From positions 73,532,001-73,596,000 of the forward strand of contig CM060732.1 in assembly GCA_030704615.1 (NCBI GenBank): a DNA stretch of 64,000 bases, given 5' to 3'. The first letter of the stretch is position 1; every line of letters begins with the position of its first letter. The DNA comes from Takakia lepidozioides (taxonomy: Eukaryota; Plantae; Bryophyta). Shown piece after piece: positions 1 to 49,804 of the stretch. The notes below the pieces were generated by a model that did not search any database, was not told the origin of the DNA, and worked only from the letters and a program-made list of their open reading frames with translations. Position numbers and translations under genes: made by a program.

Positions 1-877
1 TTATCAAAAACATTTACTCCTGTTGGAACCTCATTCCTCTCTCTCCCACGATCCTGCTTCTAAACTATGACGCAACAACAAAAAGGAAAGCTATTCATTG
101 CCCTGTTTTCGAAACACTTAGAGGTAGCACACTTTGGCACCTCTGGAAAGCAAGATGCTCCAAAACTTTCTCTGGACAAACTTCTACAGTTTCAGCTCTT
201 CCCACATCTGTTTTCTATGACCTTGGGACAGAATCCAGGAAGGCTTGGGCCAAGCATTGTGCACAGATCCAACGGAAACCAGAGATCGCAGGGGCTTCCC
301 ATGATAAATTCCGCATCACCTGGGGTAATCGAGGGCTCATCTGTAGCAGCACAAATCCAAATACATGTGTTTGGCCAGACCTGCCCCCACCCAACTGGAG
401 AGGAATTTGCACAACACTCCACCGCGTCGCTTGAGTTCGATCGAGAGAAAAACTGGAAACATCTTAAGGGCTCTTCTAAAGCCTCCCGTCTTCAGTTTAG
501 GCAGGTGTAATAGCATTACCAATCCCTAGGCAGTACACTAACTCACGTTGGTGCCATTACTATCTGTATTCATGTGTTGACTTCCAGTTCATGTTTCTTC
601 CTCCGGGGTAGTAACATAGATCCTAGGGTTCTCGTTTTTGGTAACCATAGTTAACACTTGCCTCTCCGAGGGGTCATGTTCGGGGCCTCTTTGGCTCAAG
701 TTTACCTCAATGAGGGTACGGGTTCTAACTTCACTGATAACGGTGTGTGTGCCTTATGGCGAAAATAGGGGTTTTAATTTTTTTCCCGGAATAATTCCAA
801 ATAAATTGTAATGGCCTTTCGGCCAACCAAAAATATAATATAAAAAGAAATTTATAGAAAAAAATAAATTGGTTCTT

Positions 878-12766: not shown

Positions 12767-14018
12767 GGATGGGGAAAGGGAATTGGAGGAGCTGTGCTCA
12801 TGTCTGGCTTTCTTTGAAGAGGCTATCCATGTCAGCTGAGACAGAAGCAGGGTTACTGTCTAACTAGTCCAGGAACGATTGTTTATAGTAACTTGGCATA
12901 CTCTTTAGAATGTCAAGAAACTTTGTCGCAAGTGTGGACATTTATAGAATGTCAATTGGCCCTGACAAACAGAGTACAAATGTTAGATTTGGAAGGCATG
13001 GTTCATCTGGTCAATGCAGCAGAGGACTGGAGTAAATGTTCGCGAGTTGTTTAGCTTCAATGAGTATTATTCCTCAATATCTGTTCAGCAGCTATTGGAG
13101 GTTCTGCTGGAGGCCAGCTAATATGAGAACTTCCATTGGACTCACAGGTGCTTATTTCACAACGATTCAGTTTCCTTGTAACAAAAGTAAAGGTGGAGCA
13201 GGCTTCACAGGGCTTGTCATACAGCTTTTCAAGTCAGGCTCTGTTTGATGGAGAGTACGTTGCATTGTTGCTCTAGCTTTTAGCCCGTGTTTTTCAGCAA
13301 TTAGTATTGCTGTCTGTATGGAGATTGGGGTCTAAGCTCTGTTCTTAACCACGTCTTGAAATGTGTTGTGAAAGGTCTGTTTCTCTCTCTCTCTCCCTAG
13401 CAGCATTGCTATTGTGGGGAGAATTTAGCATGCCCACCTTGATTTCTAGAAGAAGGAATTGCCAGTTTGATCAATTCACTGAGACAAGGTACTTCAGAAT
13501 GCTGACTGTGTCATGGACCAACCTGTCAAACAGGCGAAGTCATGGCAGAAGTGGGTAGATCAAATCTCAAGTTGTTGAATCCCTTATGGCAGAACTCCCA
13601 GAAGGACATTAAACACAACTGTAGTAGGCCACAGAGCAAGTGCTGCTAAAATTCAAGTCTAAGCTCTCCATCTTCCACAGTCAAATTGGAATCCATCGAG
13701 GGCACTGGGCTGAAGTTCAGGGTAAAGGGGAACAGTGTGGTAATGAAAGGAAACAATTTATTACATACCTACTGTGGGAACGCACCTCTTTTTCTAAAAT
13801 GGGGTCACTTTCTTCAGAGTGACAATCTATCTGTAAGTAAGATAATATTTTTTCTTGCTTTTTCATGTGAGGTTATCAAACTCAGATCCACCCAGCCCAA
13901 TTTTGAGCCTACATGTTGGCCAGAGGCAACACATGTTCCCCATTACTTTTTTTTTTAAAGAGCATTATTTAACCCTTCAGTGCCCAACCCCAATCCAACA
14001 TTTTTTTTCCCCTGCCTA

Positions 14019-22304: not shown

Positions 22305-24639
22305 AAGCTCACAGTTGGAACACATTGCATGTAAATCCATCATGTTTATACTTGTAGAAACTACGGTTTTTTCTTGCCATGATTCTAAGTTGAAGTTGGT
22401 CTTCGAGATCTCTTGAACATCACTGACCTAGAGTGTAAGTTCTGCGCTAACTGAAATAGTGGACAGATTTATTCTACAAGGCAATTGTAAATAACTTCAA
22501 GGCTTTGTTTTTCTCGTCCTTTCTCTTTCCCAGAAATTTGCAGCTTCAATTTGCTCACTATTCACAATCAGAACTGTCAGTCAGTGAGTTAGTATATGTT
22601 TTAATCAGTTGGAATGTGTTACATGTGAACATGTAATGGCCCCTTTGACACAGGGCTTGATTCTTACAAAATGTGGGACGTGTCCTCTAGGGACAAATGT
22701 AATGCCACCCATTCACTACCTCACTTGAAGGTTCTACTGAATGTTACAGTCCTTTACAATAATTCCATGGCCGACGATATGGAGAAGGGGACGTGTGAGT
22801 GGGAATCTCAGGATGGTTTGGTAAGTTATGATGAGAGCATGGGTGGAGTACAGTACTAAATGTCTTTTGTGGACTACACCAGCCATTTGTTAAGGAGGTG
22901 GGCTTCACTTACTGAGACCTTCAACATGATGACTCCGCGCTGTGTTCACAACTTTTCTCTAGGTTCTCTCAAGCACAACATTGCTCTCTGACATCTCCTC
23001 TTGCGAACCAGTTGATGCTTCCAGAGACTGGTCAAGAGGCTTATGGCAAGTGTCAGAGATTCACATTTGCAGGATGTGAAACTCTCATTTTGCAGAATGT
23101 CGTATGCATAGATTATGTGAAAAGGAAGAATGGAGGAGGTAGGGAAAGATCCAAATCTTCAGTCTTCTTTGCATCATCATCTTCTACTGATTGAAAAGTG
23201 AGTGCTGGTTTTACTGAAAAAGAATCAAAGGGTACTTGTTGATTCCTCTTGTTGGCATCCTATCCTTGCCCTCCACTGTCAAGTCATTCAATCCAAAGGC
23301 AATAGGCATCGATTTCCAGGAATCACTGGTCCTCAATTGCGGCAATTATCTCATGGATTCCAACCTTTGAGAGGAATCTACACTGCCAGTTCAGTTATTT
23401 CACTTCTACGGCTTGGCCAACAAGAAAAATCTGCTGATGCGCCTCACCGTCATCTTCTTCGTCTACTTCACAGTTCACCGTTTGAGCACCGATTGATGGA
23501 CTTCCAGGTTACTCCAAGACATAGAGCTCCACCTGCGGTAGCGCTGTTCTTTCGATTTCGATTTATATCACTAGACGAGCGAACTTGGGCACTCTATGCA
23601 GCGATCAACACACAAAGAGCTGCAAACATAAAGGACCCAATATCCTGCAGAATGCAATTCAACGCATACGCTACTTGTTCTCTTGCACGCAGAAACGCAG
23701 AAAACGCATGCTGTGATCAGAGAGCAAAATGGTGACGGAAGAGGTTGGCTATGAGACCGCGGACAGACCACGTAGTTGAAGCTAGAGAAAGAATGCATTG
23801 TGCAGGGGAGAGGCCGTCAGCTATGGAGGAAGCCATGTGATGAATGCAGCAGCAACGTGGGCTCCTGCTTTCGAGTTGTCTGTGGCTGCCACACTTGGGT
23901 TGCATTCAAAGTTGTTGTGGCATTGCTGGAAATGTCGGCCGTGTTTCCTTACGCAAGGGTGCAAAGCGGCTGGCAAGTTGTATCCAGCAGAAGCAGCAAA
24001 CAGGCGGCCTGGGGAGGCGGTGCGGGCTCATGTGTATCCCAGACTATATCGCTGGAAGGACGGTCAGCTAAGGAGCAAAAGGTTGTAGAGGCATTGACGG
24101 GGGCCATACAGCAACTCCGCAATGGGACTCGTGTATGTGGCCTATGTCCATCAGGCAATCCGTAATCTCTAGACGGGTCATGTCGCAGACATCTGAATTG
24201 CAGGTGTCTGTCGGGTTGGGTCAGTTGAGAGTGGCATGTCTTCCTTCATTAACTCACACTTTGAAGGGCGTAGCTAATATCGGGATCACAGTGAATTGGG
24301 CTCGTCCCAGATTGGGACTTTGCCTGCATTACATTACAGCAGGAATTCCGTGGCATGCTGAATTTGGGAAGAGCGTTAACGCAGTCCCTACCCATCGTTT
24401 CCAGCGGACAGCATTAAGTTGCATTGTGTTACGTTGCATTATTGAAGTCATCGTCAACCAACTTCCAGTATCTCGACTACAATCAGGACGGATGAGTTCA
24501 CAGCAACACACAGTTCGCATTGAATGTTTTAACCTTTGTGAACGTGTCTATCTGCACTTGAATACCCGGCATGACTGCGCCATTTCGTAGACTGAGAGGT
24601 GGAAAGAAGAAAACGCTTAAATATGTGTAGTGAAGGAAA

Positions 24640-27600
24640 GTCATGTTGGAAAAAAAATTCGAGCCAGTGATGGAGCTGTTACGGGTGCAGGAACTGGACT
24701 TACGGTATAAATTGGGAGATGCACCAGCTCTCCTACGCAAGGAGTCGTGGACTGAGTTCTGTGAAGCTTTGTCTGGCTGTAACTCTCTTCAGAGCCTCTA
24801 TTTACAGGTCTTGCCTTGCTGATCATGATTTGTTCATTTATTGTCATTGTGGCATTTCCAGATAGAAGCTTCCTTGACAACAACTATGTAATTCTTGTCC
24901 TCTGGACAAAACCCTTCTCATTTTGTTTTGATGCTCTTCCTGTGCATATACACAGGGTAATGGATTAGGTGGAAGCAGTAAAGAGGCATGGGAATTCGTT
25001 CAACAGCTCTCTGCAGCAATTTCTGGAGTTCCATGTTTGCAGATTGGAATCAAACAACTTCGGGTAGACTGGTGATCAGAGATTTGGCAAGTGTGGAATC
25101 AAAATTGTTGTGGAGGACTAGAGAAGGACCTTTGGCTCCAGGCAATTGTCTACTTCAGCTGCTACTGACCGTGGTGCATCTGTTTCAATGTTGTAAGTGA
25201 ATGCTTGAATGTGTTCCTTGTGCTGTAGCTAAACTCATCTTAGGCAGTATGGAGAGCTGAAATAGGAGGTGCACTTATAATATGGCAGGGGCTATCTGAC
25301 AGGTGCTCAACATGTCAGCCAATCAATTGGGAGATGATCACTTGAAGCTTAAAATATCTGAATTTCAGCTTTCCTCCTCATTGCATGTAAGCTTGTCTCT
25401 CTTGTTTACTTGGGCCATATACATTCCAGCTAGCTGTTTTTGGGCGTGGCAATATGCAGCTGCATTTACCTGGAGTTAGGCTGTGATTGTCATAATAGTG
25501 TGGAGAAACTCTCGTGGTGACTGACGTGCTTTTCTTTTATTAGTACTGCAGACAAAGTGTTTCATATGCATGGAAGGTGGAACTATGTCATGCCAAGACT
25601 AATCATGAAATGCTAATTTCTCAACTAAAGGTGCATCTGTGGCACAGGCGCTCTATCTGTATGCCAATGAGATAGGGGATGATGGTGCCTTGGCTATTGC
25701 TAGGGCTCTTCTTTGTAACCCAAGGTACAACTCTCAAGATGACAGGCCTCAGGTCGATTCTTCAATGATAAGCCTGATTATGATGATGCTTGCAATTGAG
25801 TGGGGTAAGATTTGCAATCTGTCCGTCGAACACACAGGTTTAGAATCCAGGACTAAGTAAATTACAGGGACTGTTGCAGGCTTAAAATGATAGAGCTGAG
25901 CTCAAACAGGGTCTGTGATGCGGGTGCGATTGGACTCGCAAATGCCCTGCGAGACACTGAGCTTCTTCATGAGATATGGCTTTACCTGGTTGACAATCAG
26001 ATAGGGAGTAATGGTTTACAAGCATGAGGGTGTGTTTGTATCTGGTTTCTGAACCAGCAATATAGTAGTCCAACAACATACCTATTTTTCAATTATAGCT
26101 TACATCCCATTGTCTGCTGATGTATTTTGCTTACAACAATGGACTTCCCATATGTTGGCAGGTAGACGAGATCAAAGGTGTCAATGTCATGTATAGTATC
26201 GACAGTTTTCTGTCAGGAGAACATGCTGTGAGTAGGATTGGCAAGAGCAAAGATACCAGCTTGGAAGGTAGACCATCCTAACTCTATACACATAGAGCTA
26301 GAATATTTTATTTCCTGCAAAAATCCTCAACTAAGGAGTATCCCAACATGCAAGTCTTTCTGTCGGTATGATGTGAGGGCTGAAGTGGTCAAAGCTGGGA
26401 TGGAAGCACAATATAAGATACCACAGGCGATTTTATCTGCCATGGTCATTGTGTCGGTTTTGCAGGTACATCGTGTAGCCCTAGCCCTGCAATTGAATAC
26501 CACGAAGAGAGGCCTGCACTGGGAGAAACTCATCATGCAGATGCACCGCCAATTACTACTGATGCATATGTTTTGAGCTCTATCTATGCAGCCAGAATTG
26601 TGCTTTGCCTGTGCATAACTTAGGTGATCTCAGGTTCAAAGTGTCCACCTTCCAACAGAAAACAGTAATCCGTCAGGATGAAGATACGCTATAATTTATG
26701 CTTCCTTCGGGAGTCTTTGCAGCCAGAAGAGTCATTCAATTAAAACCACATTCCATCTCTTAATTCTGAGTTGGGGAAGTGTTGGGCCTTCCTATGCAGT
26801 TCAGTATACAAGGCTGCAAATAACCAGAAAACTGAGGTTATGAGATTTAGAATGTGACTTTCCTCCTTTAGAGTGAATAAAACAAATTAGCCTTATCCTC
26901 TTCCTGCAACAATAGCAATATTGTTGCCATAGAAACAACCACGATCTGTGAAGTAATATGCATTATTGCACTTGGTAATCTTCTTCAAAGGGTGTCTAGA
27001 GGGAGGAGAGGACAACCTGGGCCATACTTCAAACCCATTTGACTTCTCCATCTCCAAGAAGGCAGTGATGACCTTCACAGCTTGAACGCCCACCCCATGC
27101 TGATGTAGAACATCCCTCCAAGACTCGGGCACAAGTTGATCCAGACTTCCAAGTAGTTCATCAGTAACTGCATGTTCTATTATGTGCTGTGATGGAAGAG
27201 GTGCAACTGAAAGCCTGCCAATCTAACATGATGGGTGACAATTGGCTTGTTCGTAGGGCTGAGCTTATATTTCGTGCCTTGCAACTCTGCCCTCATGCCG
27301 ATGTGCGGGTCGTGATCATTGGGTATTCAGGCATTTTGAAACCTCTCTTGCTTTTAGAACTTCATAGACTACAAGATGTTGCCTTCATGTGCTCTTTATT
27401 ATGGGAAAGGTGGATTAGAGGACAAGTGTGGCTCATGAGGCAAAGCATGGCACCTATAACGTGGCCGTGGGATGTAAGTGTGTGCCAGACCATATCCATA
27501 TCCAGTAAGGGGTGAGGCTGATGGCTTGGCATTCTCCAATCGCCAGGTTAGGTTGACCAGATTCTCTCTGGTCCTTTGATTGTGTGGTCATTTGTTGTTT

Positions 27601-28845
27601 TTGTGTGAGAGAGAGGGAGAGTCATTACATTTTCTAGCCTCAGCAAAAGATGACATTTCTGCATTTCAGTGAAGAGATGCACTCCCTATGCAGAAATGTT
27701 TTCTCCAGATTGAGGTTCAGGGTCCAGTCTTCACATTTTGACGCATGAAGATATGCCATATCAGTTGCAAAGGACAAGTTATGGAATGGAACGGGTTGTG
27801 AAGCATTCCTGAATTGTGGAAGTGGGTGTTACAGTGGAGTGCGAGGAAAGCCACAACTCGCATCCTATCAAGCATTTTGAGGAGATTGAGAGAGAGTACA
27901 ATATCAGCACTAACTCGGGGGACCTTTCAGCTTGGGCCAAGCAAGTATGCTCCTCTGTTGCTTACTTGATTCCTCTTTGTCTCGCACTTTTCACAGTTGT
28001 TTTCTTTTAATGGATGGAATAGAGGCAGACCATTTGCAGGGGTACGGATGTTTATTCTACAGTGCTCAACTCTCTAATCCTGGCCTCACAATGAGGGATG
28101 CTGATGGGTAAGGAGGCTGCTAGGTTTTGGCTGACCATGTGGGTAGGTTGAGGATCAAGGGATATAAAGGATTATGAAAGAGAATGTGATTTTGTTCTGC
28201 CGAATTGATAAATTTAACACTAGATACAAGGTATCGTAGGTGTGGGAGTAGCACCTTCAGCAAATTTCTAAAGTTTTGGAGGTTGGAAGGCTTGAGCGAG
28301 TTCCCCTTCTAGACGAGTGTCAGTGTGAAGAGTCGATATTGAAGCCCTGCTTATTGAGTAAAGCTTTGTGTGGTGGCAGGGTGTGCTTCTTTTAAACACT
28401 TCTTTGACCATCAATGGAAGCACAATGGAAAGTCACAAGCGGGTGTGGAAACCTTTTGTTGATGCTGTAATTGCAGCTGTTTCTTGTCGACCAGGTTCCT
28501 GCATCCCTTTTGCCCTCTGGGTTTGCATGGAGTGTTGGACACATTTACGAATAGTTTTCGGCCTGTGCGTGTCTCCAGGAGAAATCACTACTGATCGACA
28601 AAAGGCATCCAATCCTCAGGGTCCCTCACCTCCGCCCAGATAGTTTTAGAGGTAAGTGTGCTTCAGAATGCTCTTCTGACTCTTCTCTGCAGATTAGTCT
28701 CATGTCTTCTGACATTTTCTTTCCTCCATCCCTGGATGTCTTGCTCACAATGTCATGTGCTATGGAAGGTTGTGGCTACTTTACACAAATAAACAAGGTG
28801 CTCAGGGAGGGAGGAGTGGAGGAGATAGACTGGCAATTGCCATAA
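24640..28845 (+). pseudogene. RI-like leucine-rich-repeat + uracil-DNA glycosylase (UNG family 1)-like fusion pseudogene; 5' exon(s) possibly from ~23780
   Basis: LRR exons VQELDLR/GNGLG, VLNMSANQLGDD, ALYLYANEIGDDGALAIARAL, LKMIELSSNRVCDAGAIGLANAL..LYLVDNQIGSNG. UDG exons AELIFRALQLCPHADVRVVIIG/PYPYPVRGEADGLAFS, GDLSAWAKQ/GVLLLNTSLTI...SHKRVWKPFVDAVI...FALW, IDKRHPIL..PHLRPDSFR/GCGYFTQINKVL...IDWQLP*. Lesions: stop or frameshift near 26025, frameshift near 27875, apparently lost donors, one inverted exon. Confidence 0.78.
27017..27167 (-). other. Inverted exon of the UDG-like domain
   Basis: Minus strand CATGCAG|TT ACT GAT...VPESWRDVLHQHGVGVQAVKVITAFLEMEKSNGFEVWP AG|GTTGTC (151 nt). The phase-2 end joins the plus-strand exon at 27257 (AG+G = Arg, then AELIFRAL). 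Bracketed by CCTCTTCC (26897-26904) and GGAAGAGG (27194-27201). Confidence 0.85.
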
Positions 28846-30131
28846 CTGCAGAAAGTCTCCATGCTTGTCTTTCATCTTGCAATACATACATGACAGTCTC
28901 TTAACATAGGCAGATAGAATATAGGTACAATTTTTGAACATCTGCTTAACTGTCCAGCCAAATTACTGGAAAAAAGTTAAAATAGAAAGCATAATCATCT
29001 ATTTTGTTAATGTCAGAGATGCATTGAAAAGCTCACTGATACAAATATGGCGGACAGATACATAAATTGCACCAAGGCAGTTGTTAAGGTATACTTTCAC
29101 TCTATTGTGCCATATAAGCAGACATGCAACATCTCACAATTGTAGCTCTTCAACATATCCAAACTTTTTGATACTCATTTGAAGACAATTGCGAGATCAA
29201 AACTCACCAAAACTCCAGGAAAAAGGTACAGGAAGACAATCAGGATGCCTGGCTTAAAAGGCATCCTCTTCCAATATTTTCTGCATCACCATGTAAATTA
29301 AAGAAAACTACAGACTTTCACTAACACAGAACCTCACAATCAATCTTGAAGGATTGAACTCCTCCCAAACAGTTCCTCCGCCACTTTTTGAATTGGAACC
29401 ATGCCTTGAAGGAATCAACAAACTCTACCAGATACCGAACTAAACCTCAACAGGTGCAGCACTAGCCAATACAGCAACTAAGACAAGCCCTGCCTGCACC
29501 TGCACACACAGCAACAACTGCTGCCATAAAAGATCTGTAAAAGATAGCAGGCTCCAATGACCTGCAGCATTCTCCTGTGTGGACCCAAAAGTAGTTGACT
29601 AGCACGATGGAGCCATCCTCTGTCTGCCTGCACCTGCTGTCTGTCTGTATCCACCTTCACCTGTCAGTCCAAAGGGCAGGTTAACTTCCATACTCTGCGC
29701 TAAACAGCAGAGCAATTCCTGCAACCTGCAGGTACAACTTGGACACAACTGTGAGCTTGCTTGCCAGATACAGTTACACAAATGCACCTTCGTTCCTAAA
29801 TTACTGCTCACACTTTGAATAGAGTTCCTGTTCCAGCAGAAGTGTAGCATGATGCTCCCATTACAGCTCACAACTCAAACTGGTGTTCATATCAGTGGCA
29901 GCCTAGACTGCCGCCTGCAACAATGTTGAACATTGCATCTATACCTGAGACCTGCGCACATGCTCAGGTTCATTGTCAGTAACCCGACAAAAGACTTCTC
30001 ACAAGACTTGAGAAATTGTGCGATTAGGGTGTAAAAGCTTGCAGTGCAAAGCTTGCCAGTTCTCTGAAGAGATCAATACTTGCATTCAAGATCAGGAGAG
30101 TATCGCAATACAAACCACAAAAAATTCGCCA

Positions 30132-32629
30132 CTAGTCCTCTGCATATGGTGCAGCTCCAGCGGCCCCAGGAGAAGCAGGTGTTGGAGGTTCAGCTTGGCG
30201 CTGCTCCCTCTCACGATTCCACTGTTCGATCTTGGCCCGCCGCTCTGCGGAACCTTCACGAGCCGGACTCCTCCCTCTTCTTTGAGCAGGGCTACGACTG
30301 CGACTTCTATCTCTTCTTCTTCCTCCCCCCCTGCGATCATCAAATGATCGACGATCGTCCCTCTCTTCAAAACGACGACCAAAACCACGGCCCCGTCCAC
30401 CTCGACCCCGACGTGGCTCAAAAAATTCCCTGCACACAAGACATCCACCAGCACCACATTGTACACCACATCTGTACTAGATATATTCATGCCAAAAGAA
30501 GTAACCAAGTACTGTCAGAGCATAACAATTGCAATTTAATCCACAGTAGGATTACAAAACCATACAGCTTCATTAATCATGAAAAAATAGAACGTACAGC
30601 TGCCAGATATACAAATACTTAAGGTCCGCTTTACACCAGGGACAGTGTGACACTTTAAAAATTGAAGCACTGGCATGATTGGATGAAAAAAGTCAAGTGT
30701 CGCCTGGGGCGCCTGGGTTTTTTCTTTGGAGGTGACACTTTGCACATTAAATGCAGATACGTGACACTTCTCAGGCCTCCTCCCATTCATTTTGATAATA
30801 TTATATTATTTCTGTACACTTCCAACCATTTGGAGGAAAAGTTGGCATTAAACAGCCGGAGAAGGTCATGTACTTCACCAAAGTGTCACCTGGAAACTTT
30901 ACACTACTTATTAGGTAACATCATCAATCTTTTCATGGGTGACAGTTTGGGTGACACTAGCAAAGTGTCACCTCAAAACTATCCCGGGTGTAAAGTGGCC
31001 CTAAGCTGACTTCCTGTCTCTATTCACAAGCTCCTCGCTACCACATAACTGCAGGAGATACAGCATTGAAACACAAATACACCAGTACTAACCTTTCTCC
31101 AAATCTACGAGGACTAGCAGGACCCCGTGCTTCCCCACGACCATATGGCGAGTGACTCCTACTGCGGCTACGCCTTCTGTAGCTTCCAAAAAGCTTCCTT
31201 CTGAGTTCCCTGTCACATGCCAAGAAAAACATTTCCTTTAACAGTCTAGGTAAATTTTGCTGGAAGAATATGTACAAATATTGATGTGGAGTAACAGTTA
31301 AAAACCTATTACATCTCTCAACAATAGTCACCTCGAGATTTTCTTCAAATGCATGAAGTTGCAATATCCTCCCCTGTTGCAAGTGTTCTCCTCATACTGC
31401 CTGCATGTGGCTTCCCGGAAATCTGTGACTGGCGAAAAGTCGAGGATGATAGGTCGACCTGAAAGGCAGAAAGTAAATCCTGTTAGAAACCCTCTCGCAT
31501 ACCATGGACAACTCTTCCAAACTAAACAAGGAGACCAAGTAAACAGGCTATGCACAAGCCTGGTGTACAGCAATGTTCCGTGAACAAAGCTACAAGAGCT
31601 TGCAAAATAAAAAATTTACAAATACAGTGAGCATAGCAAAAAAGGAGAATCATTTCTTTGATTTCACTAAACACAGCCAGGATATACCTGCATAGAATCG
31701 CCCATTCAGAGCATTCAAGGCAGCAGCAGCATGCTCCTCTTCACGAAACTTGACATAGACGTTTCCAATCTTCCAGAACGAGTACACAACATCAACGGAT
31801 TGCAAAATATTAGAAAAAGAACACACTCACGCTACATCACATGATGGTTCTCAAAAACCTGGTGGAGAAACAACATGATAGACAGTGATAGACAGATAGT
31901 ATAAACACTGGAATACTTACCATGTGATCAGCAAGATTGTCGCACACATTGAGATTCTCGATCTCACCGTACTTGCTTAGCTCTTCAAAGATGTCTTCGT
32001 AGAAATCCTGAAGCACACAACAAACGTAGATCAAAGCATTAGACAAAAAACGCTGATCTTCTCTTCTCCAAAACTGGCAAGTGATTCAAGAGCTTCACTC
32101 AGAAAGACGTGCACTTCACAAAGTTATATCCCCAGCAGTGAGTCGGGATGTAAACAGAAGAAGGCCAACAATAGCGGATCCGTTCCACCCACTGATTCTA
32201 CACGCGTTGCACTAAGCTGAATTTCCATCCCTTCTAAATCTACAATAACTAAAAACCCTCAACATATTCCAACCTCCTAAGTCGACTTTTATGCATGTTT
32301 CAGACGCACATAAGCGAGGCAGCTTACATAACAGTAAACAAGTGCAAGCCTCTCTGAATCAAAGGAAGAAGGCTGGGACGGACCTCAAAGTGCTCCTGAA
32401 GCTTGCGTGGATCGGACTGCTGAATATTTCCATGCTGGTCCACGCCCCCATGAAATCCAGCATCTGGCGACTGATACATATTAGCCAACAGCAGAGTCTG
32501 GCTAGCCGTAGGCCGGTTATGGAGACGAGAGCATCGATCCCCGTGCCTACACACTCCTATCTTGAAGTAAAACGGGCAGTTGACGCGATCCTTCTCCGTA
32601 CCGAATATGGATGCCAAATGCTCCGCCAT
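30132..32629 (-). CDS. U2AF35: U2 snRNP auxiliary factor small subunit (U2AF35), 6 exons
   Basis: [118 protein letters not shown] domain, plant [19 protein letters not shown] motif. Confidence 0.97.
30623..31001. mobile_element. Tourist/PIF-Harbinger-like MITE in the last U2AF35 coding intron
   Basis: 24-bp imperfect TIRs GGTCCGCTTTACACCAGGGACAGT / rc GGGCCACTTTACACCCGGGATAGT. TAA TSD at 30620-30622 and 31002-31004. Internal AAAGTGTCACC/GGTGACACT motifs in both orientations. Confidence 0.85.
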
Positions 32630-42585: not shown

Positions 42586-45227
42586 ATGGCACCACGATCG
42601 ATCAGTCGCACTTTCAACTTCCAACAGATGGTGTCCAGCACACAATTCTCTTATCGCAACGTGTTCTACACATCCTGGGCCGTTGCTTTTGCTCTGCTGT
42701 ACTTGATCCAACGAAACTACAGTGACGGTGGTGTCACTTCTCCACCTCAAATTGTTCCAATACTTCGACGGCATGTGTTCAATCTGACAGATTTTGGTGC
42801 AGTAGGGGATGGCAAGACTCTCAACACGAAAGCTTTCGAGCAAGCAGTAGCTGCAATTCGCGCTGTTGAACAGGAGGGGGGTGGGCAGCTCAATGTGGGT
42901 CCTGGGCATTGGTTAACAGCTCCGTTCAATGTGACCAGCAACATGACTCTTTTCCTCTGCGAGGGTGCAGAAATTATGGGCGTCCAGGTTCTCATGGACA
43001 TCCTCCTTTGGCGTCAAGAGTAGTTTGGTTTCTTATATGCAGTTATTATGGAGGTAGTGTATATTTGCTTGGGTGTTGCAAGAGGCATCTCTATGGACTG
43101 GACATGGGGTGCCTAGAGGGCGATCATTCTTGCAGAGTATTTGGTAGTCTTTGAAATATCTTGCTGAAAGCATCTTGGAGCAGTGTGGGTCTGATTTAGC
43201 TCCAAATTCACAGTCCAAGTTTGCTCAGAAAACTGGAGGGAAGCTCCAGACCAAGGGAAGTCATTAGAATCGGTGGGTCGCTGTGTTGTCCTCACTTTAC
43301 CGAGGAGCCTCGTCCGGGGTCCAATCCGGATGTGTATAATTTTAATATTCTTTGCATTTCTGCCCACAAAACTGAAAGACATTTCTGGGTCTGGATGCAG
43401 GATGAGAGCTTGTGGCCGCTCATGCCTGCATTGCCATCGTATGGGCGGGGTCGGGAGCTTCCAGGCCCACGCTATGGCAGCCTCATCTGTGGTCAATACC
43501 TCGATGACTTTGTCATCACTGGTACTTTCCTCTGTCCATGGGTCTCTTGCCTCTATCTTTGTGTGTGTGTCTTGGTTTGTGTGCATAAAGCCATTCACGG
43601 GCTAGGGTTTTTGTCATAGTAAACTGTAAATGCAGTTGTAGGGTCTAGTTCAGGTGTTAGTTCTTGGCCAGCACTTGCATGACTTCCCCAGAGGTATACA
43701 GTGCTGTCAATCATTGTCTGCAATCAGGGCCTAGGGTTTTCGCAATCATAAAATTTTATTGGATCTAGTAGTGCACAGGGAGTACAGCTGTTGTTGATAA
43801 TTGCCCGGGGTTGGGTGGAAATTTGGTGTAGGTCATAATGGGAGCATAAATGGGCAAGGTGTATGGTGGTGGCGGCAACACAAGCTGAAGAAGCTGCAGT
43901 ATACAAGAGGGCGATTGATAGAGCTGATGTGGTCGTCCAATATAGAAATCTCAAATGTCACACTGCGTAATTCCCCCTTCTGGACACTGCACCCCTACGA
44001 TTGTACCAATGTCACTGTCCGTGGTGTCACCATCCTGGCCCCTGTGGATGCTCCCAACACGGATGGCATCGACCCTGGTCAGGCCTCCTGTTTCTCTCTA
44101 AATTCTCAATTTTCGAGATGTTGAATTTAGAAATAAGTCACCTCAGAATTACTTGCTTTAATTTTTCTCTTCAGCTGTAGTATGTAGTGAATTGCCATGA
44201 TATGTTGTATTTATGTGGGTGTGTATGAACTTAATAAGGGAAGCAGAAGACTACAGGCTAGACTTGCGGATGCTCCCTGGCTAGGCTTCAGTCTATCAAT
44301 GTAAGAGTGACCTTGGTTGCAGACAAGGGGACCAATTATTGACGAGGAAAGTGGGGCTGTAACCTGGCTGTGGTATTATAGATTCTTGTCAGAATGTGCT
44401 GGTTGAGAATTGTTACATTAGTGTGGGAGATGATGCTGTGGCAATCAAGAGTGGATGGGACCAGCATGGAATTAAATACGGCCGGCCTTGTATGAACATC
44501 ACCATACGCAATGTTGTTGTCCATTCCCGGATCAGGTGGTCCTCTCTATCTTTTGTATTGTTACTAAAAGTATTTAGGACAAGAAATAATTGTAGTTGTA
44601 AGTATGCAATCTTGACTGAAATCTGTGATGTAGTAATTGATGGTGAGGGTACTTTTACACAGACTTGATGGGACGGCCTATATGATCGGTTGTCGGAGAA
44701 TGAAAGGACTCTATGTGGGTGGCAGTGCTGGGTTTTCAATAGGGAGCGAGATGTCAGGAGGAGTGGCAAATGTGCTAGTGGATGGCCTTTATGTCTGGGG
44801 ATCAAGGAGGGGCATCCGCATCAAAACTTCACCAGGTCGAGGAGGCTATGTGAAGAATATCCTGTTCCGAAATATAACATTGGACAATGTGATGGTAGGT
44901 ATTGTCATCAAGACAGATTATGGGGATCATCCAGATCCTGGGTTTGATCCACATGCGCTCCCACTGGTTGCAAATATATCGTTCAGTGGTATACGTGGAA
45001 GCCTCGTACGGTTCCCTGTTAGAATTTCTGGCAGTAAGGAAGTGCCAGTAACTGGTATAGAAATCAGAGACATGAATATTGGTGTAACTAGGAAGAAGAA
45101 GCGTATCTTTCAGTGTTCTTTCGTAGAAGGAAAAGTGGTGGGAAAGGTTTTCCCAAAACCTTGTAGAGAATTAGCTCAGGAGGGTGCTGGGGTAAAAAAT
45201 GCTGTATTTGTGCAGACGTCATTGTGA
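42586..45227 (+). CDS. Polygalacturonase / pectin lyase-like (GH28), 5 exons, N-terminal membrane anchor
   Basis: DFGAVGDGKTLNTKAF, WLTAPFNVTS, WPLMPALPSYGRGRE, NSPFWTLHP, APNTDGIDP, GDDAVAIKSGWD, IGSEMSGG, RIKTSPGRGG. Confidence 0.95.
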
Positions 45228-46612
45228 TCTTCGATGGAAACTAAAACCAAACAAATCATGCCATCTAAGTACTTTCTGCCTGAATGATTGAAAAATGAAA
45301 AATTGCATGGAGTTAAGATTGGGCCTGAAGGGTTGATTGTCAGTGACTCAGGGTTATATGTTGTTAGGTTTGATTGCAATTTTACATAATGGAGTGATTG
45401 TCTTATTTTGGTTTGAATGAAGGTCGGAGGTCCTAGTGGATCAAAAACTAAACTCTGGAAGGCCATAAGGCAAACAAAGGGTACCACTCAAAAGGCGCAT
45501 ACTAAACAACCATGAGAATGAGTCAACCTACACCAGAAGCTTAGCTAAGGACCTTGTCAACATATAGAAGGGCCGTTATGCTACTCTCACGGTACCTTCG
45601 GCCTCAGCTGGTCTGTTTTGCTTGGGGTTGCTGGCCCTACACTGCTTTTATGTGTACTCATGGATCTTTGAAGTTTAATTTTCCCTCATTTGAAAGTTGT
45701 GAATTCTTATCCTTCCATCCTATCCTTATTTCTTTCTCTATTTTACGAAGACCAAATTCCATTAGAAATAGATTTAAAAGGTAAAACATAAGAGAAAATA
45801 AATATTTAAGTAGGTTTTTCTGTTTACTAAATAAAAATGCAATTTGCTAGTCCTTTTTTCTGGCTAATTTCTAAAGAGAAATGCCAATTTCAACTAATTA
45901 ATAATACAAAAAATCAGAAAAATCAGAAAAAATGTGCATTGGGTAGGAAATCCGTCTAGGGATCCCATGAGCCATGGAGCGGTCTTTAGTTGTGCTAGCA
46001 ACCCACACGGGGAAGAGGCTCTTATTTACGCTAACTTCGGCTGGCGTCACATATATACAGCAACCCCTCCATCCTACAAAAAAATCAAATGGACATTTGG
46101 GATCCCATAGGAGGGCCACCCAAACAGTTGGAAACACCCTCCTAAAGGCCATAGAGTTCTTGGTTCTAGCCTGGAGATCTCAAGTTCAACTCCTTAAGGG
46201 CCAGCCTGTGATTTCATCCTCCGGATGGATGTAATGCTCCCATTCATCCACTTTCTAACAGCCCCATCCAATGATGTGAGCTCAAATCTCAAGTCCTTCA
46301 ATGGGCAAAACATGCATGCAAGGCTAAATTCTATTTAATTGTTGGTCCGGCTTTAGATCCATCAACCTCTAGGTGGGCCAAAGAGCGAGGTGTCGGTGAA
46401 GAATGGCCATCTCGGTTCAAATCCCGCAAATCTTTGGCTCAAACGGATGAGGTTGGGTTGAGCACAAGGGCATATTCCTCAGATTTCCCAGATACATGTG
46501 GAATATTCCACAACGAAACGAAATTGGCGAAACTAAAAACATCTACGAAACTATTTCCATTCGTTTACTTGAGCACTAGTTACAACACATAAAGAACGAG
46601 CAGCCCGACGAA

Positions 46613-46712
46613 CATGTTACCCTATAGGCGTGTATTTTTCTCACGATGTGCTCACATAATACCATGTTACCCTATAGGCGTGCATTTTTCTCAGGTTGTG
46701 CTCACACAATAC
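46613..46712 (+). repeat. 50-bp tandem duplication
   Basis: CATGTTACCCTATAGGCGTGYATTTTTCTCA..TGTGCTCACAYAATAC x2. Confidence 0.85.
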
Positions 46713-46936
46713 CAGACCCTTTTCATAATAGGCTCGAGAATGGGCGGTGAGGCTTCAGCTCACATTTAAAGTCCTCGCCTATGGATAATTTCTCCCAACA
46801 AACTTTGTTTCAACCAGCCTGAGTTTAAATCACACTGTAGTTGAAAGGATGCATAGGTCACTAAAGTCCTCACCCATGTATAATTTCACAGAGCGAAACT
46901 CTGTCCTAACGACTACAATTACATATTGAGAGACAC

Positions 46937-49804
46937 ATTTGCAATGCGAAAGTGTGATCCCTGAAGAGAGGTTGGGTAGCGTCCAGGTAGGATGCTCACG
47001 AACATGAAAGAATATGAAGAATATTCTTGAGATGTCCAGAGAAAATTACACAGCTAAGGAGATTGTACTCATGCGACAAAAATAAGAGGACTAATAACAA
47101 ATTGTATAAAATGTGCTCACATGTCATAACAAATAAGGTTGCAACGCCTTTGTGCATATAACAGGGAAGTTGATATTTCAAATTGTGTTTGCGTAAATAT
47201 TGTCTACACCAACTTTCTCTATGAGATCTTCTCTATCTTATCTATAATACACATTTGTTGCCTCACATGACTAATCGCATTAAAAATGCAATATACATAT
47301 CTTGACTTCACCTAATTCCAATAAAAAAATATAATTGTACATCTATGAACTAATTGCACTTATCTATTTCATGAGATTGGTTACAAATAACTGAACTTAC
47401 ACTTAGTTGTCTGCATTTCATAAGAAACGTGTATTTCATAAGACCGGACTACAACTTTATATGACTACACTCACGATGACATGTTATGTCTGAGAATAAT
47501 TGATACAAAAAATTTTATGGGAGGGTTTATCGCAAAGAGGCCACCACTCCCACTGTCACACCATAGCTGTTTATTATGGACATGAGTTCGGATAGCCTCT
47601 AAAAAAGACCACTAAGGCTTGGCACGGTGACTCCGTACAAACTGGGTCCAAGTGACAACGGCCTCAACGGTTACGGGCATCACCACAAACATTGAAAATA
47701 TCTTTCACAATGAGAAATACAATTCTACAAGAACGTACTCAGATCATTTGGACACAGAAACTTATTTCGCGGCACAATCGAAATGAGGACAAAACAGTCA
47801 TTCTGGCCTCCTATCGATAACCTTTTGCGGTATGAAAATACTATGAAATCCTCTCAAACTCTCCATTTTTACTCTCAATATCATCTAATGTAAACCACTG
47901 ATCACGAGTCATATGACATCATCTTAACATACACATAGAATATAGCGAACAATTCTGCCAAACAAAGGCTTGCGATTTATCTACAATTCCAAATACAAAT
48001 CGAATTTTGGGCGAGAACTGGGTCCGAGTGACAGCAGCCCCAACGCTTACGGGCATTCCCACAGACGTTGGAAAAATCTTTCGCAATGAGAAATACAATT
48101 CTACGAAGACTAATTGGGATAATTTCGACATAGAAACTTATTAGTAGCACGATCGAAATTAGGACAAAACAGGGCCTCCTATAGAAAACCTCTTTGTCGT
48201 ACAAAAGTATTATGAGAAACTCCCCATTATTACTCTCAATATCATCTAATGTAAACGACTGATGCAAAGTCTTGAGCCATCATATCATCATACAAGTACA
48301 ATATGACAAACAATTCTGCCCAACAAAAGGCTTCCCATAATCTGCAATTCAAAAAACAAAGCTAATTTTGGGCGAGAATTAGGTCCGAGTGAGAGCGACC
48401 ACAACGGTTATGGGCATCTTCACAAACGTTGAAAAAACCTTTCGCAATGAGAAATACAATTCTACAAACCAAATTGATCTTGATGTCCATGAAGAAATTT
48501 ATCGCGAACATGTTAGATACGACATTGATGTTCTTCAAAGAGGTTTCCAATTATGATCATTGGTTTACATAGATCCTAATGATTACCAAAATTTTTTGAA
48601 GACCAACAGTTTGGTTTCCTATAAGTGCTCTCAGTATATTCCCATCCGAAGGTTAAAATTATCTAGCTCAAAATTGTCATGTGTATAAAACACAATGAGT
48701 GAACATTTCGCCTTGCAAAACGTCTTTCACTAGCTCCACTGCATGCCCAAAAAAATGATTGTAATCTACATCCAAAAGTTGGCATATGAGTACCAAACTA
48801 GTCCATCGAGTGGATACTCAATAACAATTTTGCGATGCAAAAAGATTTCTCTCAGACTGATTCCCAATATCTATAACTGATTTTTGTCTTTTTCATGTAT
48901 ATATGTGACTATCCTCGGATATAATTTTGGAACAACCACTGTATTTCGTAGTGCGAAAATTGTTTAATGATCCGGTATTCTCAAACTGATGTGTTGTATA
49001 GATTACCAATATCATGTTTTACTTATGTTACTTATGTGGTTTCACAATGCAAAAATGATTGTATTCATAAAAAGGCTTAGATTTGAGTCCATCTGACAAC
49101 ATTATGAGGGGTATAGGCTCCCTATTGCATTGAATTTATTTTTCGCAAGGCAAAAACCATATCATCAAGTAGTTTTCCACAGGGTATGTGGTTTTCAATT
49201 CCTTTGGTCGTGACGAAATGTCTCGAACTTATCCTAATAGAAATTTAGCCACTTACGTAACATTGCAATATATTCGGCTCTCACATAGGTGGTGGTAACA
49301 TTTCGCAAGGTGAAAGTTCATCCACAATGAACATTCGACGAATCATTGTCTCGTAATCTTTGCCACTATATATGTTCAATTAAAAATTAGCGTGTCAAGA
49401 AATGTGTTTCGCGCCGCGAAAGGCGCCTCTAACATTGCAAAATAATTAAAATATGATGGCTATTTGTTTCGACTCATTTTCGGAGACTAGCTTACATTCA
49501 TAGTGGTTTTATTACCAACATATTGTTGTACAACAACTTTCTATTTCCATCAAATATGCAAATTGGTCTAGGAGATGTCATGCTATCGATGGCTAGGAGA
49601 ACATAGACCATGTATGTGATCCTGGTGAAATCTTTCGTTTGGACAGATGAGTTTCGTGTACCGAAAAGATCTTCAGATAGCTCTCACCGCCCAAACTAGG
49701 ATGGGATGGTAACATTTTTTAGTGCATTCCACATGAATGGAGTTGATTGCTGGACCCCATGTATTTAAGATCATGTTTTGTTCTCAGCCTTTCGCAGTGC
49801 GAAA
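46937..49804. repeat. Array of TTTCGC-N3-GCGAAA palindromes
   Basis: Copies start at 46937, 47703, 47823, 48079, 48440, 48706, 48828, 48944, 49040, 49141, 49301, 49407 (perfect), 49652 and 49790 (perfect). Confidence 0.8.
47641..48470 (+). repeat. Degenerate tandem repeat, period ~360-377 bp, ~2.3 units
   Basis: GGTCC(A/G)AGTGA...GGGCAT...CAATGAGAAATACAATTCTAC recurs at ~47641, ~48018 and ~48378. Confidence 0.85.

What the first reader, a model, noticed from the sequence alone, without database searches (positions are those of the whole stretch)
24640..28845. LRR receptor-like domain fused to a catalytically altered uracil-DNA glycosylase
Seen: about five RI-type LRR units (e.g. LYLYANEIGDDGALAIARAL), linker exon candidates, then an essentially complete UNG fold, with compatible splice phases at several junctions. 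Known: family-1 UNGs use GQDPYH (catalytic Asp) and HPSPLS. Here these read GPYPYP and HLRPDS, while the scaffold motifs (W..VL, IF.AL, V.VVIIG, GLAFS, GDL..WAKQGVLLLN, GC..F..IN..L...IDW) are kept. I know of no described LRR-UDG architecture in plants. Inference: the family may be an immune-type sensor using an inactive UDG as an integrated decoy (e.g. for UDG-inhibitor proteins) or as a uracil-DNA reader. This copy is broken, so the active-site changes could postdate pseudogenisation.
Basis: partly seen in the sequence, partly recalled or inferred. Interest (0 to 1): 0.85.

Follow-up and report, generated by a model that had tools for sequence, protein, structure and literature searches.

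The report
Broken moss LRR–uracil glycosylase fusion gene
A moss gene that joins a protein-docking leucine-rich-repeat domain to the DNA-repair enzyme uracil-DNA glycosylase is real and shared with the alga Chara, so the design predates land plants, but this moss copy is transcribed yet damaged and nothing shows it is an immune decoy.

Summary
From 24,643 to 28,845 the + strand carries five RI/RanGAP-type LRR exons and then six exons of a family-1 uracil-DNA glycosylase (UNG). The first UNG exon lies on the opposite strand (27,167-27,017). A UNG profile finds these seven pieces as its best hits in the whole window, in collinear order (positions 4-223 of 226).

One public protein has the same LRR-to-UNG order: Chara braunii CBR_g4801 (1104 aa, Pfam LRR_6 + UDG). 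It shares intron positions, phases and exon lengths (66/66 and 58/58 nt). In Chara one uninterrupted exon runs from the LRRs into the UNG domain. The fusion is therefore real and older than land plants. I found no paper on it and no third member.

Neither gene has an NLR, kinase or membrane part.

The moss copy is transcribed and spliced: three joints appear in RNA-derived contigs at 100% identity. Its UNG half is broken:
- the first exon is inverted;
- one base is missing at the exon U3 acceptor, so the mRNA leaves the UNG frame;
- exon U4 is skipped;
- the Gly-Ser loop is lost;
- the catalytic Asp is Tyr.

Best reading: an expressed, recently decaying orthologue.

The parts
24643..24807 (+). 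Exon L1: ATG plus the first LRR/cap (…VQELDLRYKLG…LQSLYLQ). Ends in phase 0 at the same place as Chara exon 2 (…LKALYLQ).
   Evidence: Donor 24807|24808 seen in an RNA contig. tblastn against the Chara locus gives E=0.001.
24956..25063 (+). Exon L2: LRR unit GNGLGGSSKEAWEFVQQLSAAISGVPCLQ plus 7 extra codons (IGIKQLR). The ancestral donor after CLQ has no GT here.
   Evidence: Acceptor 24955|24956 seen in RNA; the contig runs on to 25060. Phase 0 to 0.
25303..25386 (+). Exon L3: LRR unit VLNMSANQLGDDHLKLKISEFQLSSSLH (predicted; AG/GT, phase 0 to 0).
   Evidence: No RNA cover and no Chara counterpart found. The Chara intron at that place holds N gaps.
25648..25724 (+). Exon L4: LRR unit ALYLYANEIGDDGALAIARALLCNP(R).
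   Evidence: 68% identical to Chara exon 4, E=2e-6 against the Chara locus. Pfam LRR_6 E=0.09.
25880..26013 (+). Exon L5: two LRR units (LKMIELSSNRVCDAGAIGLANAL…EIWLYLVDNQIGSN). If the donor at 26013|26014 is not used, the frame stops at 26025-26027.
   Evidence: Pfam LRR_6 E=4.5e-4. Matches the start of the large Chara exon.
26897..27201 (.). Inverted segment (26905-27193) between 8-nt inverted repeats CCTCTTCC (26897-26904) and GGAAGAGG (27194-27201). It carries UNG exon U0 with its acceptor and donor.
   Evidence: (pair I24). Eight-nt inverted pairs are common here, so the arms alone are not significant.
27017..27167 (-). Exon U0, the first UNG exon (…LDQLVPESWRDVLHQHGVGVQAVKVITAFLEMEKSNGFEVWPR), on the opposite strand. 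Its donor AG|GT is phase 2, which fits the U1 acceptor.
   Evidence: Profile positions 4-43. Translation. Same phase as the end of Chara exon 5.
27257..27322 (+). Exon U1 ((R)AELIFRALQLCPHADVRVVIIG). 66 nt, phase 2 to 2, the same as Chara exon 6 (66 nt).
27489..27546 (+). Exon U2 ((G)PYPYPVRGEADGLAFSNRQ). 58 nt, the same as Chara exon 7 (QDPYPRRGDADGLAFSKPK). Here Gln is Pro and the catalytic Asp is Tyr.
   Evidence: Donor 27546|27547 seen in RNA.
27835..27944 (+). Exon U3 (…EIEREYNISTNSGDLSAWAKQ). 110 nt against 111 in Chara. With the acceptor seen in RNA (27834|27835) the mRNA reads a different frame from the UNG frame. An in-frame AG lies 5 nt downstream (27839|27840).
28380..28520 (+). Exon U4 (GVLLLNTSLTINGSTMESHKRVWKPFVDAVIAAVSCRPGSCIPFALW), the uracil-specificity strand. 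It starts as Chara exon 9 does but ends 15 nt earlier, so 'GRKAQ' (the Gly-Ser loop region) is missing. The one RNA contig across it skips it.
28579..28651 (+). Exon U5 (EKSLLIDKRHPILRVPHLRPDSFR-G). The Leu-intercalation loop reads HLRPDS (28627-28644): His kept, Leu to Asp.
   Evidence: The RNA contig resumes at or within 2 nt upstream of the predicted acceptor 28578|28579, and no placement gives GT..AG. Profile 170-188, weak..
28769..28977 (+). Exon U6 ((G)CGYFTQINKVLREGGVEEIDWQLP, stop at 28843-28845) and 3' UTR.
   Evidence: RNA contig 28768-28977. Profile 199-223. Chara counterpart at L001:49106-49180, E=4e-5.

Best explanation
This locus is the moss orthologue of an old streptophyte gene. 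The gene fuses an intracellular RI/RanGAP-type LRR domain to a family-1 uracil-DNA glycosylase (UNG). The only other member found is Chara braunii CBR_g4801.

How the family most likely works (inferred): the LRR horseshoe is a protein-docking module. It is tethered, in Chara by about 500 disordered residues, to a UNG domain that recognises and probably excises uracil in DNA. Chara keeps the Gln-Asp water-activating pair, the Tyr and Phe of the uracil pocket, and the Asn of GVLLLN.

In this moss copy (shown): the gene is still transcribed and spliced, but the UNG half can no longer be translated into a whole fold.
- The first UNG exon is inverted.
- Exon U3 is one base short at its acceptor, so the mRNA leaves the UNG frame.
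- The only contig across exon U4 skips it.
- The Gly-Ser loop codons are gone.
- The catalytic Asp is Tyr and the intercalating Leu is Asp.

It is therefore an expressed, recently decaying copy. At most it yields an LRR-only or scrambled product. The active-site changes are specific to the moss lineage. They may have come before the breaks (inferred).
For: Homology and architecture:
- The UNG profile hits all seven exons in collinear order, and they include its best hits in the window.
- U4 against solved UNGs gives E=6e-5.
- phmmer of U4 against 1.84e9 representative proteins finds Chara P0003 as the hit with the highest identity (60%).
- P0003 passes the Pfam thresholds for LRR_6 (38 bits) and UDG (30.3 bits). 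It also matches TIGR00628 at 2.8e-40 and solved UNGs at 2.5e-27.
- Collinear matches of L1, L4, L5, U1, U2, U4 and U6 to the Chara locus.
- Identical exon lengths and phases: 66/66 and 58/58 nt.
- Chara exon 5 (L001:33985-35805) is one open frame running from the LRRs into UNG.

Expression: spliced contigs at 100% identity.

Damage:
- U0 is on the minus strand.
- The RNA joint 27546|27835 puts GDLSAWAKQ out of frame; the exon is 110 nt against 111 in Chara.
- U4 is skipped, through a non-canonical joint.
- 'GRKAQ' is absent.

Recency (inference): about 420 exon codons carry no internal stop, and all other splice sites are kept.
Against: - No read links the LRR exons to the UNG exons in the moss. 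RNA evidence is a few contigs at depth 2-5 from one small run.
- The inversion is known only from this assembly and could be an assembly error or a polymorphism.
- An in-frame AG 5 nt downstream (27839|27840) and inclusion of U4 could give a minor in-frame isoform that was not sampled.
- Exons free of stops, and changes clustered in DNA-contact loops while scaffold motifs stay, would also fit a protein that was recently under selection as a non-catalytic fold.
- No second land-plant orthologue was found to date the changes.
Confidence: 0.6

Rival explanations
1. The moss gene is functional and encodes a non-catalytic UNG-fold protein, a uracil-DNA reader or a bait for UNG inhibitors, tethered to an LRR. 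On this view the inversion is an assembly artefact or a rare allele, and the in-frame acceptor at 27840 is used in the productive isoform.
For: All exons are open, and splice sites are kept at the conserved positions. The scaffold motifs (ADGLAFS, GDLSAWAKQ, GVLLLN, WKPF.DAVI, IDW) are retained, while the changes fall in the catalytic and DNA-contact loops. The locus is transcribed. Degenerate UNG domains do exist in nature, for example the second domains of bacterial P0002 and P0006.
Against: The only RNA contig across U2-U3-U5 is out of the UNG frame and lacks U4, the core strand. U0 is antisense in the assembly. Chara keeps GQDPY, so loss of catalysis is not a family trait. No inhibitor, partner or immune domain is known.
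Confidence: 0.15
2. This is a secondary, duplicated or transposon-captured copy of the gene, and an intact LRR-UNG parent sits elsewhere in the same genome. The RNA contigs could then come partly from the parent.
For: The window lies among transposons: earlier notes name a MULE before the window and a gypsy element beyond it. Another note reports an intact, divergent UDG-fold gene elsewhere in this genome (s1-477020; not checked). A SINE-like fragment sits in the LRR-UNG spacer.
Against: The RNA contigs match this copy at 100%, including the frame-breaking joint. There is no second copy in the window. The introns and the whole exon order are those of the Chara gene, as expected for the orthologous locus. 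The other UDG noted is 948 nt, and its title does not suggest an LRR fusion.
Confidence: 0.12
3. The LRR part and the UNG part are two unrelated neighbouring genes or fragments, and the apparent fusion is chance adjacency.
For: No moss read joins them. The L5 frame can end at a stop at 26025-27.
Against: Chara has the same order within one gene, and a single exon there spans both parts. Seven pieces of the moss locus match the Chara locus in order. L5's phase-1 donor fits the phase-1 acceptor of U0.
Confidence: 0.04

Closest known systems
Chara braunii hypothetical protein CBR_g4801 (GBG69973.1, UniRef A0A388KJ30; P0003)
   Same: RI-type LRR_6 repeats lie upstream of a family-1 UNG domain. Intron positions and phases are shared, and exon lengths match (66 and 58 nt). 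Both carry the ADGLAFS signature, WKPF, IPFALW and the C-terminal IDW exon.
   Different: Chara has a 240-aa Arg/Ser/Ala-rich N-terminus and a linker of about 500 aa. It keeps GQDPYP, SLENIL and LWGRKAQ, and all its exons lie on one strand. Its public model is cut short: the last exon lies beyond the annotated end, and N gaps hide the HPSPLS region. It is only an automatic annotation; I found no paper on it.
Family-1 uracil-DNA glycosylase (human UNG, E. coli Ung; Pfam PF03167, TIGR00628)
   Same: The fold-defining motifs appear in order: W..L N-terminal helix, VVI.G, GL.FS, GDLS.WAKQGVLLLN, SH…FTDAVI, F.LW, RH.VL..H, F…N..L…IDW.
   Different: In the moss GQDPYH reads GPYPYP, HPSPLS reads HLRPDS and the Gly-Ser loop is deleted. 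SL.NI is not recognisable. The domain is fused to LRRs, and the ORF is broken.
Ribonuclease-inhibitor / RanGAP-type LRR proteins (Pfam LRR_6)
   Same: 28-29-residue units of the form L..L.L..N.IGD.GA..LA.AL, about one unit per exon. The best LRR hits outside Chara are RanGAP-like proteins.
   Different: There are only about 5-6 units, no WPP or GAP context, and a glycosylase is attached.
Plant NLRs with integrated decoy domains
   Same: Only the idea: an LRR next to a copy of a host enzyme domain.
   Different: There is no NB-ARC, TIR, CC or kinase domain. The LRR is not the plant-NLR type. The Chara enzyme domain is not dead. No paper links UDG with integrated domains.
Bacterial multi-domain UNG fusions (Nth-UDG-UDG', UDG-UDG', PIF1-UDG, Fpg-UDG; P0002, P0006, P0016-P0134)
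   Same: They show that family-1 UNG is often fused to other modules, and that catalytically degenerate UNG copies persist next to active ones. The second domains read GAEP…ADGLAFS and HPALSP.
   Different: The partners are DNA-repair or helicase domains, not LRRs, and the genes sit in prokaryotic contexts.

Membership tests
Family-1 UNG (PF03167 / TIGR00628) | Sequence homology across the whole domain | tested here: met
   A profile of 10 UNGs hits seven moss exons collinearly over positions 4-223 of 226. U4 gives E=6e-5 against solved UNGs and 1e-7 against TIGR00628. Tested exon by exon only.
Family-1 UNG (PF03167 / TIGR00628) | Water-activating loop GQDPYH with the catalytic Asp | tested here: not met
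   The moss reads G-PYPYP (Gln to Pro, Asp to Tyr, His to Pro) at 27489-27504. Chara reads GQDPYP.
Family-1 UNG (PF03167 / TIGR00628) | Uracil-specificity strand GVLLLN (Asn) and Phe of GL.FS | tested here: met
   GVLLLN at 28380-28397 and GLAFS in U2.
Family-1 UNG (PF03167 / TIGR00628) | Leu-intercalation loop HPSPLS (catalytic His, inserting Leu) | tested here: not met
   The moss reads HLRPDS: His kept, Leu to Asp. For Chara this could not be tested, because the exon was not found and N gaps lie at L001:45081-45675 and 47285-47639.
Family-1 UNG (PF03167 / TIGR00628) | Gly-Ser loop after the F.LW strand (LWG..AQ.K) | tested here: not met
   Moss U4 ends at FALW, and U5 starts at EKSLLIDKRH. 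Chara has FALWGRKAQ.
Family-1 UNG (PF03167 / TIGR00628) | One translatable reading frame for the domain | tested here: not met
   U0 is on the minus strand. The RNA joint 27546|27835 shifts the frame, and U4 is skipped.
RI-type LRR (Pfam LRR_6) | Tandem 28-29-aa units L..L.L..N.IGD.GA..LA..L | tested here: met
   Five exons carry about six units. Pfam LRR_6 gives E=4.5e-4 and 0.09 on single exons, below the gathering score. The units align with the Chara LRR_6 region, which scores 38 bits against a cut-off of 23.4.
LRR-UNG fusion gene (Chara CBR_g4801 type) | Same domain order with shared intron positions and phases | tested here: met
   the intron after LYLQ; VI.G split GG|A; U1 66 = 66 nt; U2 58 = 58 nt; U4 starts at GVLLLN; terminal IDW exon.
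LRR-UNG fusion gene (Chara CBR_g4801 type) | LRR and UNG on one transcript in the moss | tested here: inconclusive
   Contigs cover L1-L2 and U2-U3-U5 and U6 separately; none bridges the two halves. In Chara a single exon bridges them.
Plant NLR / LRR receptor-like immune receptor | NB-ARC, TIR or CC signalling domain, or signal peptide plus transmembrane part with or without a kinase | tested here: not met
   No such Pfam hit on the moss pieces or on the whole Chara protein. No long ORF with such domains within 10 kb either side (by eye, not scanned).

The most novel reading that the evidence does not exclude
Streptophytes carry an old, so far undescribed LRR-tethered UNG. In the moss lineage its glycosylase domain lost catalysis (Asp to Tyr, Leu to Asp, Gly-Ser loop gone) while the fold stayed under selection. 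That would make it a non-catalytic uracil-DNA or UNG-inhibitor sensor, which has only very recently begun to break in this genome or strain.
Probability: 0.15. Interest if true: 0.75.

Novelty: new variant of a known kind. Interest (0 to 1): 0.5.

Why it matters
Family-1 UNG is one of the best-studied DNA-repair enzymes. In eukaryotes it is normally steered by a short disordered N-terminal tail. A version tethered to an RI/RanGAP-type LRR, kept with the same intron pattern from Chara to a moss, is a domain design I did not find described in any paper. It points to an unknown partner-directed use of uracil recognition in streptophytes.

It also gives a natural series for study. The Chara gene has the known catalytic residues in place. 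The moss gene has the DNA-contact loops altered and has just been broken. The series can be used to ask whether the fold was reused without catalysis.

For annotation, it shows that the Chara model is truncated and that the moss gene is absent from protein sets.

Tried and rejected
- **Pfam on ten single exon pieces:** blank except for weak LRR_6 hits. The pieces are too short.
- **Solved structures with U0 and U3 alone:** nothing relevant.
- **Rfam on 24000-29500:** nothing.
- **Second copy in the window:** none. A weak UNG-like hit at 13628-13819 (E=0.095) looks like chance.
- **Frameshift inside U3:** I first thought the 5' half of U3 was read in the RNA frame, with a (GA)n slip mid-exon. 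The profile gives no support for that frame. The exon length comparison with Chara (110 against 111 nt) places the missing base at the acceptor instead.
- **Other family members:** protein searches with the Chara UNG part in length windows 607-1932 aa and 223-709 aa, and with the LRR part, found no other LRR-UNG. Metagenome contigs gave only bacterial UNGs at 38-48% identity. Viral contigs gave none.
- **Chara exon for the HPSPLS loop:** not found; N gaps lie there.
- **Quick ML tree of 66 UNG domains:** Chara sits on a long branch beside a GQDPYP-type clade (SH-aLRT 91), two sampled members of which, P0144 directly and P0145 as a close relative, lie in bacterial gene neighbourhoods. It sits apart from four eukaryotic sequences. 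No canonical plant UNG could be included, so the origin stays open.
- **Papers:** no hit for the Chara accessions or for UDG as an integrated domain.
- **Not done, by rule:** the joined, spliced protein was not built, searched or folded. All searches were exon by exon, by reference.


Full report
**What is in the sequence**

Three-frame translation of 24600-28900 shows short open pieces bounded by AG and GT.

There are five LRR exons:
- L1 24643-24807
- L2 24956-25063
- L3 25303-25386
- L4 25648-25724
- L5 25880-26013

They carry the RI-type unit L..L.L..N.IGD.GA..LA..L. Six plus-strand exons then spell a family-1 uracil-DNA glycosylase:
- U1 27257-27322
- U2 27489-27546
- U3 27835/27840-27944
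- U4 28380-28520
- U5 28579-28651
- U6 28769-28845

Coordinates and phases were checked. G-PYPYP stands where GQDPYH is expected, and HLRPDS where HPSPLS is expected.

The first UNG exon (…LVPESWRDVLHQHGVGVQAVKVITAFLEMEKSNGFEVWPR) is on the minus strand at 27167-27017. Its own acceptor and a phase-2 donor are intact, and that donor would fit the acceptor of U1. It lies between the 8-nt inverted repeats 26897-26904 and 27194-27201. Such short pairs are frequent here, so they prove nothing alone.

**Is it more than chance?**

- Exon U4 alone matches solved UNGs at E=6e-5 and TIGR00628 'ung' at E=1e-7.
- I built a profile from ten bacterial-type UNGs found here, without the Chara protein. I ran it against all 3,224 stop-free six-frame segments of the 64-kb window.
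- The best hits are the locus's own pieces, in collinear profile order: 4-43 (minus strand), 43-65, 68-86, 98-119, 119-166, 170-188 and 199-223 of 226.
- Single LRR exons are weak in Pfam (LRR_6 E=4.5e-4 and 0.09). Their reality rests on the Chara comparison below.
- Every search was on one exon or one stop-free piece by reference, and the local alignment keeps each exon as its own row.

**A relative with the same architecture**

phmmer of U4 against 1.84 billion representative proteins gave 15 hits. The one with the highest identity (60% over U4) is P0003, which is 1104 aa. This is Chara braunii hypothetical protein CBR_g4801 (GBG69973.1, UniRef A0A388KJ30).

P0003 passes the Pfam thresholds for both LRR_6 (38 bits) and UDG (30.3 bits). 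Its C-terminal part matches TIGR00628 at 2.8e-40 and solved UNGs at 2.5e-27.

tblastn of P0003 on the window, and of the moss exons on the Chara locus L001, gives collinear matches:

| Moss exon | Identity to Chara |
|---|---|
| L1 | 35% |
| L4 | 68% |
| L5 | 52% |
| U1 | 54% |
| U2 | 72% |
| U4 | 60% |
| U6 | 43% |

The gene structures agree in detail:
- an intron directly after …LYLQ;
- the Gly of VI.G split GG|A;
- U1 66 nt against 66 nt;
- U2 58 nt against 58 nt;
- U4 starting at GVLLLN;
- a terminal …IDW exon.

In Chara, exon 5 (L001:33985-35805, 607 codons, no stop) contains the last LRRs, the linker and the first 30 or so residues that align to solved UNGs. The fusion there does not depend on a predicted splice. 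The architecture is therefore real, and it was present before Charophyceae and land plants parted. That dating is an inference from shared introns.

The Chara model is truncated. Its last exon lies at L001:49106-49180, beyond the annotated end. N gaps lie between it and exon 9, so the Chara state of the HPSPLS loop is unknown.

**How rare is it?**

Three searches of 5.8 billion proteins found no other LRR-UNG. They used the Chara UNG part for lengths 607-1932 aa and 223-709 aa, and the LRR part. Long UNG fusions are common, but they are bacterial: PIF1-UDG, Nth-UDG-UDG' and Fpg-UDG. The nearest LRRs are RanGAP-like. Metagenome and viral contig scans with U4 gave only bacterial UNGs or nothing. 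Four literature searches found no paper on the Chara protein, on LRR-UDG, or on UDG as an integrated domain.

**Expression and integrity of the moss copy**

One small public run of the same organism holds contigs that lie on the locus at 100% identity and skip introns, so they derive from RNA.

What the contigs show:
- Joints 24807|24956 (GT..AG) and 27546|27835 (GT..AG).
- A joint from 27943-45 to 28577-79, which omits exon U4. No placement of this joint gives GT..AG.
- A contig over U6 and 130 nt of 3' UTR.
- No contig links the LRR exons to the UNG exons.

The 27546|27835 joint matters most. U2 ends in phase 0, as in Chara, but the UNG frame of U3 (…GDLSAWAKQ) needs one more base. From the RNA acceptor to the canonical donor, U3 is 110 nt, where Chara has 111. 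The mRNA therefore reads WSARKATT… instead of the UNG sequence. An AG 5 nt downstream (27839|27840) would be in frame but was not seen.

With the acceptor seen in RNA and canonical splicing, the frame runs into a stop in U4 (inference from the sequence). The isoform that was sampled avoids this by dropping U4 and shifting one base. It regains the U5/U6 frame but lacks the core strand.

Further losses:
- The codons for the Gly-Ser loop are absent. Chara has FALWGRKAQ; the moss has FALW followed directly by EKSLL.
- SL.NI is unrecognisable.

With the inverted U0, the UNG half cannot give a complete fold.

**Timing (inference)**

About 420 exon codons carry no internal stop, and every other splice site is kept, so the breaks are recent. 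The residue changes sit in the catalytic and DNA-contact loops, while ADGLAFS, GDLSAWAKQ, GVLLLN, WKPF.DAVI and IDW are intact. This pattern fits a period of selection on the fold without catalysis somewhat better than random decay. With only two members known, it cannot be tested.

- The architecture claim is right.
- The label 'receptor-like' is not: the repeats are the intracellular RI/RanGAP type.
- Neither gene has NB-ARC, TIR, kinase, signal-peptide or membrane parts.
Chara reads GQDPYP, with Gln, Asp and Tyr, plus Phe (GLAFS), SLENIL and Asn (GVLLLN).
- His to Pro at the sixth position also occurs in free-standing bacterial UNGs (P0012, P0013). It is not a sign of a dead enzyme.
- A family-wide dead decoy is therefore not supported. 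A moss-lineage loss of catalysis is real but sits in a broken copy.

**Origin of the UNG part**

The Chara domain scores alike against bacterial, human and herpesvirus UNGs (99-88 bits) and lower against the mimivirus enzyme (54 bits). In a quick tree of 66 domains it sits on a long branch next to a GQDPYP-type clade (SH-aLRT 91), two sampled members or close relatives of which (P0144, P0145) lie in bacterial gene neighbourhoods. It sits apart from the four eukaryotic sequences I had. No canonical plant UNG was available, so I leave the origin open.

**Verdict**

This is a real and undescribed domain design: an RI-type LRR tethered to a family-1 UNG, shared by Chara and a moss. The moss locus is its expressed but recently broken orthologue. 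I give confidence 0.6 for that reading.

Rivals:
- a still-functional non-catalytic protein (0.15);
- a secondary copy with an intact parent elsewhere (0.12);
- chance adjacency (0.04).

An attempt to test whether the Chara LRR docks on its own UNG domain was not run by the tool.

Noticed in passing
window 26598-26709: A stretch of about 110 nt in the LRR-UNG spacer matches very abundant contigs (depth 150-1100) in two runs at about 90% identity. The unmatched upstream letters of those contigs carry a tRNA-like A box (GGTAGCCCAGTGGTTGGG), and the stretch holds a B-box-like GGTTCAAAG. It is probably a fragment of a tRNA-derived SINE. There is no Rfam hit and no second copy in the window.
   Followed up: partly
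L001 (Chara braunii BFEA01000123.1) 43807-49180: The public Chara gene model CBR_g4801 ends in read-through intron (…GRKAQ then VRITSLLTTFTTT*). A terminal UNG exon (CQHFSKINDFLKSQGLPPIDWSLA*) lies 5.3 kb further on, at 49106-49180. N gaps at 45081-45675 and 47285-47639 may hide the exon for the HPSPLS loop.
   Followed up: partly
P0002, P0006, P0004, P0016-P0018 (metagenome proteins): Bacterial proteins carry two UNG domains in tandem, some behind an endonuclease-III domain. The second domain lacks the catalytic Asp and His (GAEPVSASDLADGLAFS … EHPALSPE). The paired second domains form their own clade (SH-aLRT 100).
   Followed up: partly
P0019-P0134: PIF1-helicase-UNG fusions, often with an extra Cauli_VI/RNase-H-like part, are very common among long UNG-containing proteins in metagenomes. 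Fpg-UNG, PARP-UNG and photolyase-UNG fusions also occur.
   Followed up: no
P0142 (Plasmodiophora brassicae, 701 aa): A eukaryotic protein annotated as uracil-DNA glycosylase holds two UNG domains that are each other's closest relatives in the tree.
   Followed up: no
window 13628-13819 (+): An open piece gives a weak match (E=0.095) to the same profile region as exon U4. It lacks the conserved motifs and is probably chance.
   Followed up: partly
window 31038-31382 (-): An open frame with an Arg/Ser-rich tail (…[16 protein letters not shown]…), like an SR-type splicing factor exon, lies downstream on the other strand.
   Followed up: no
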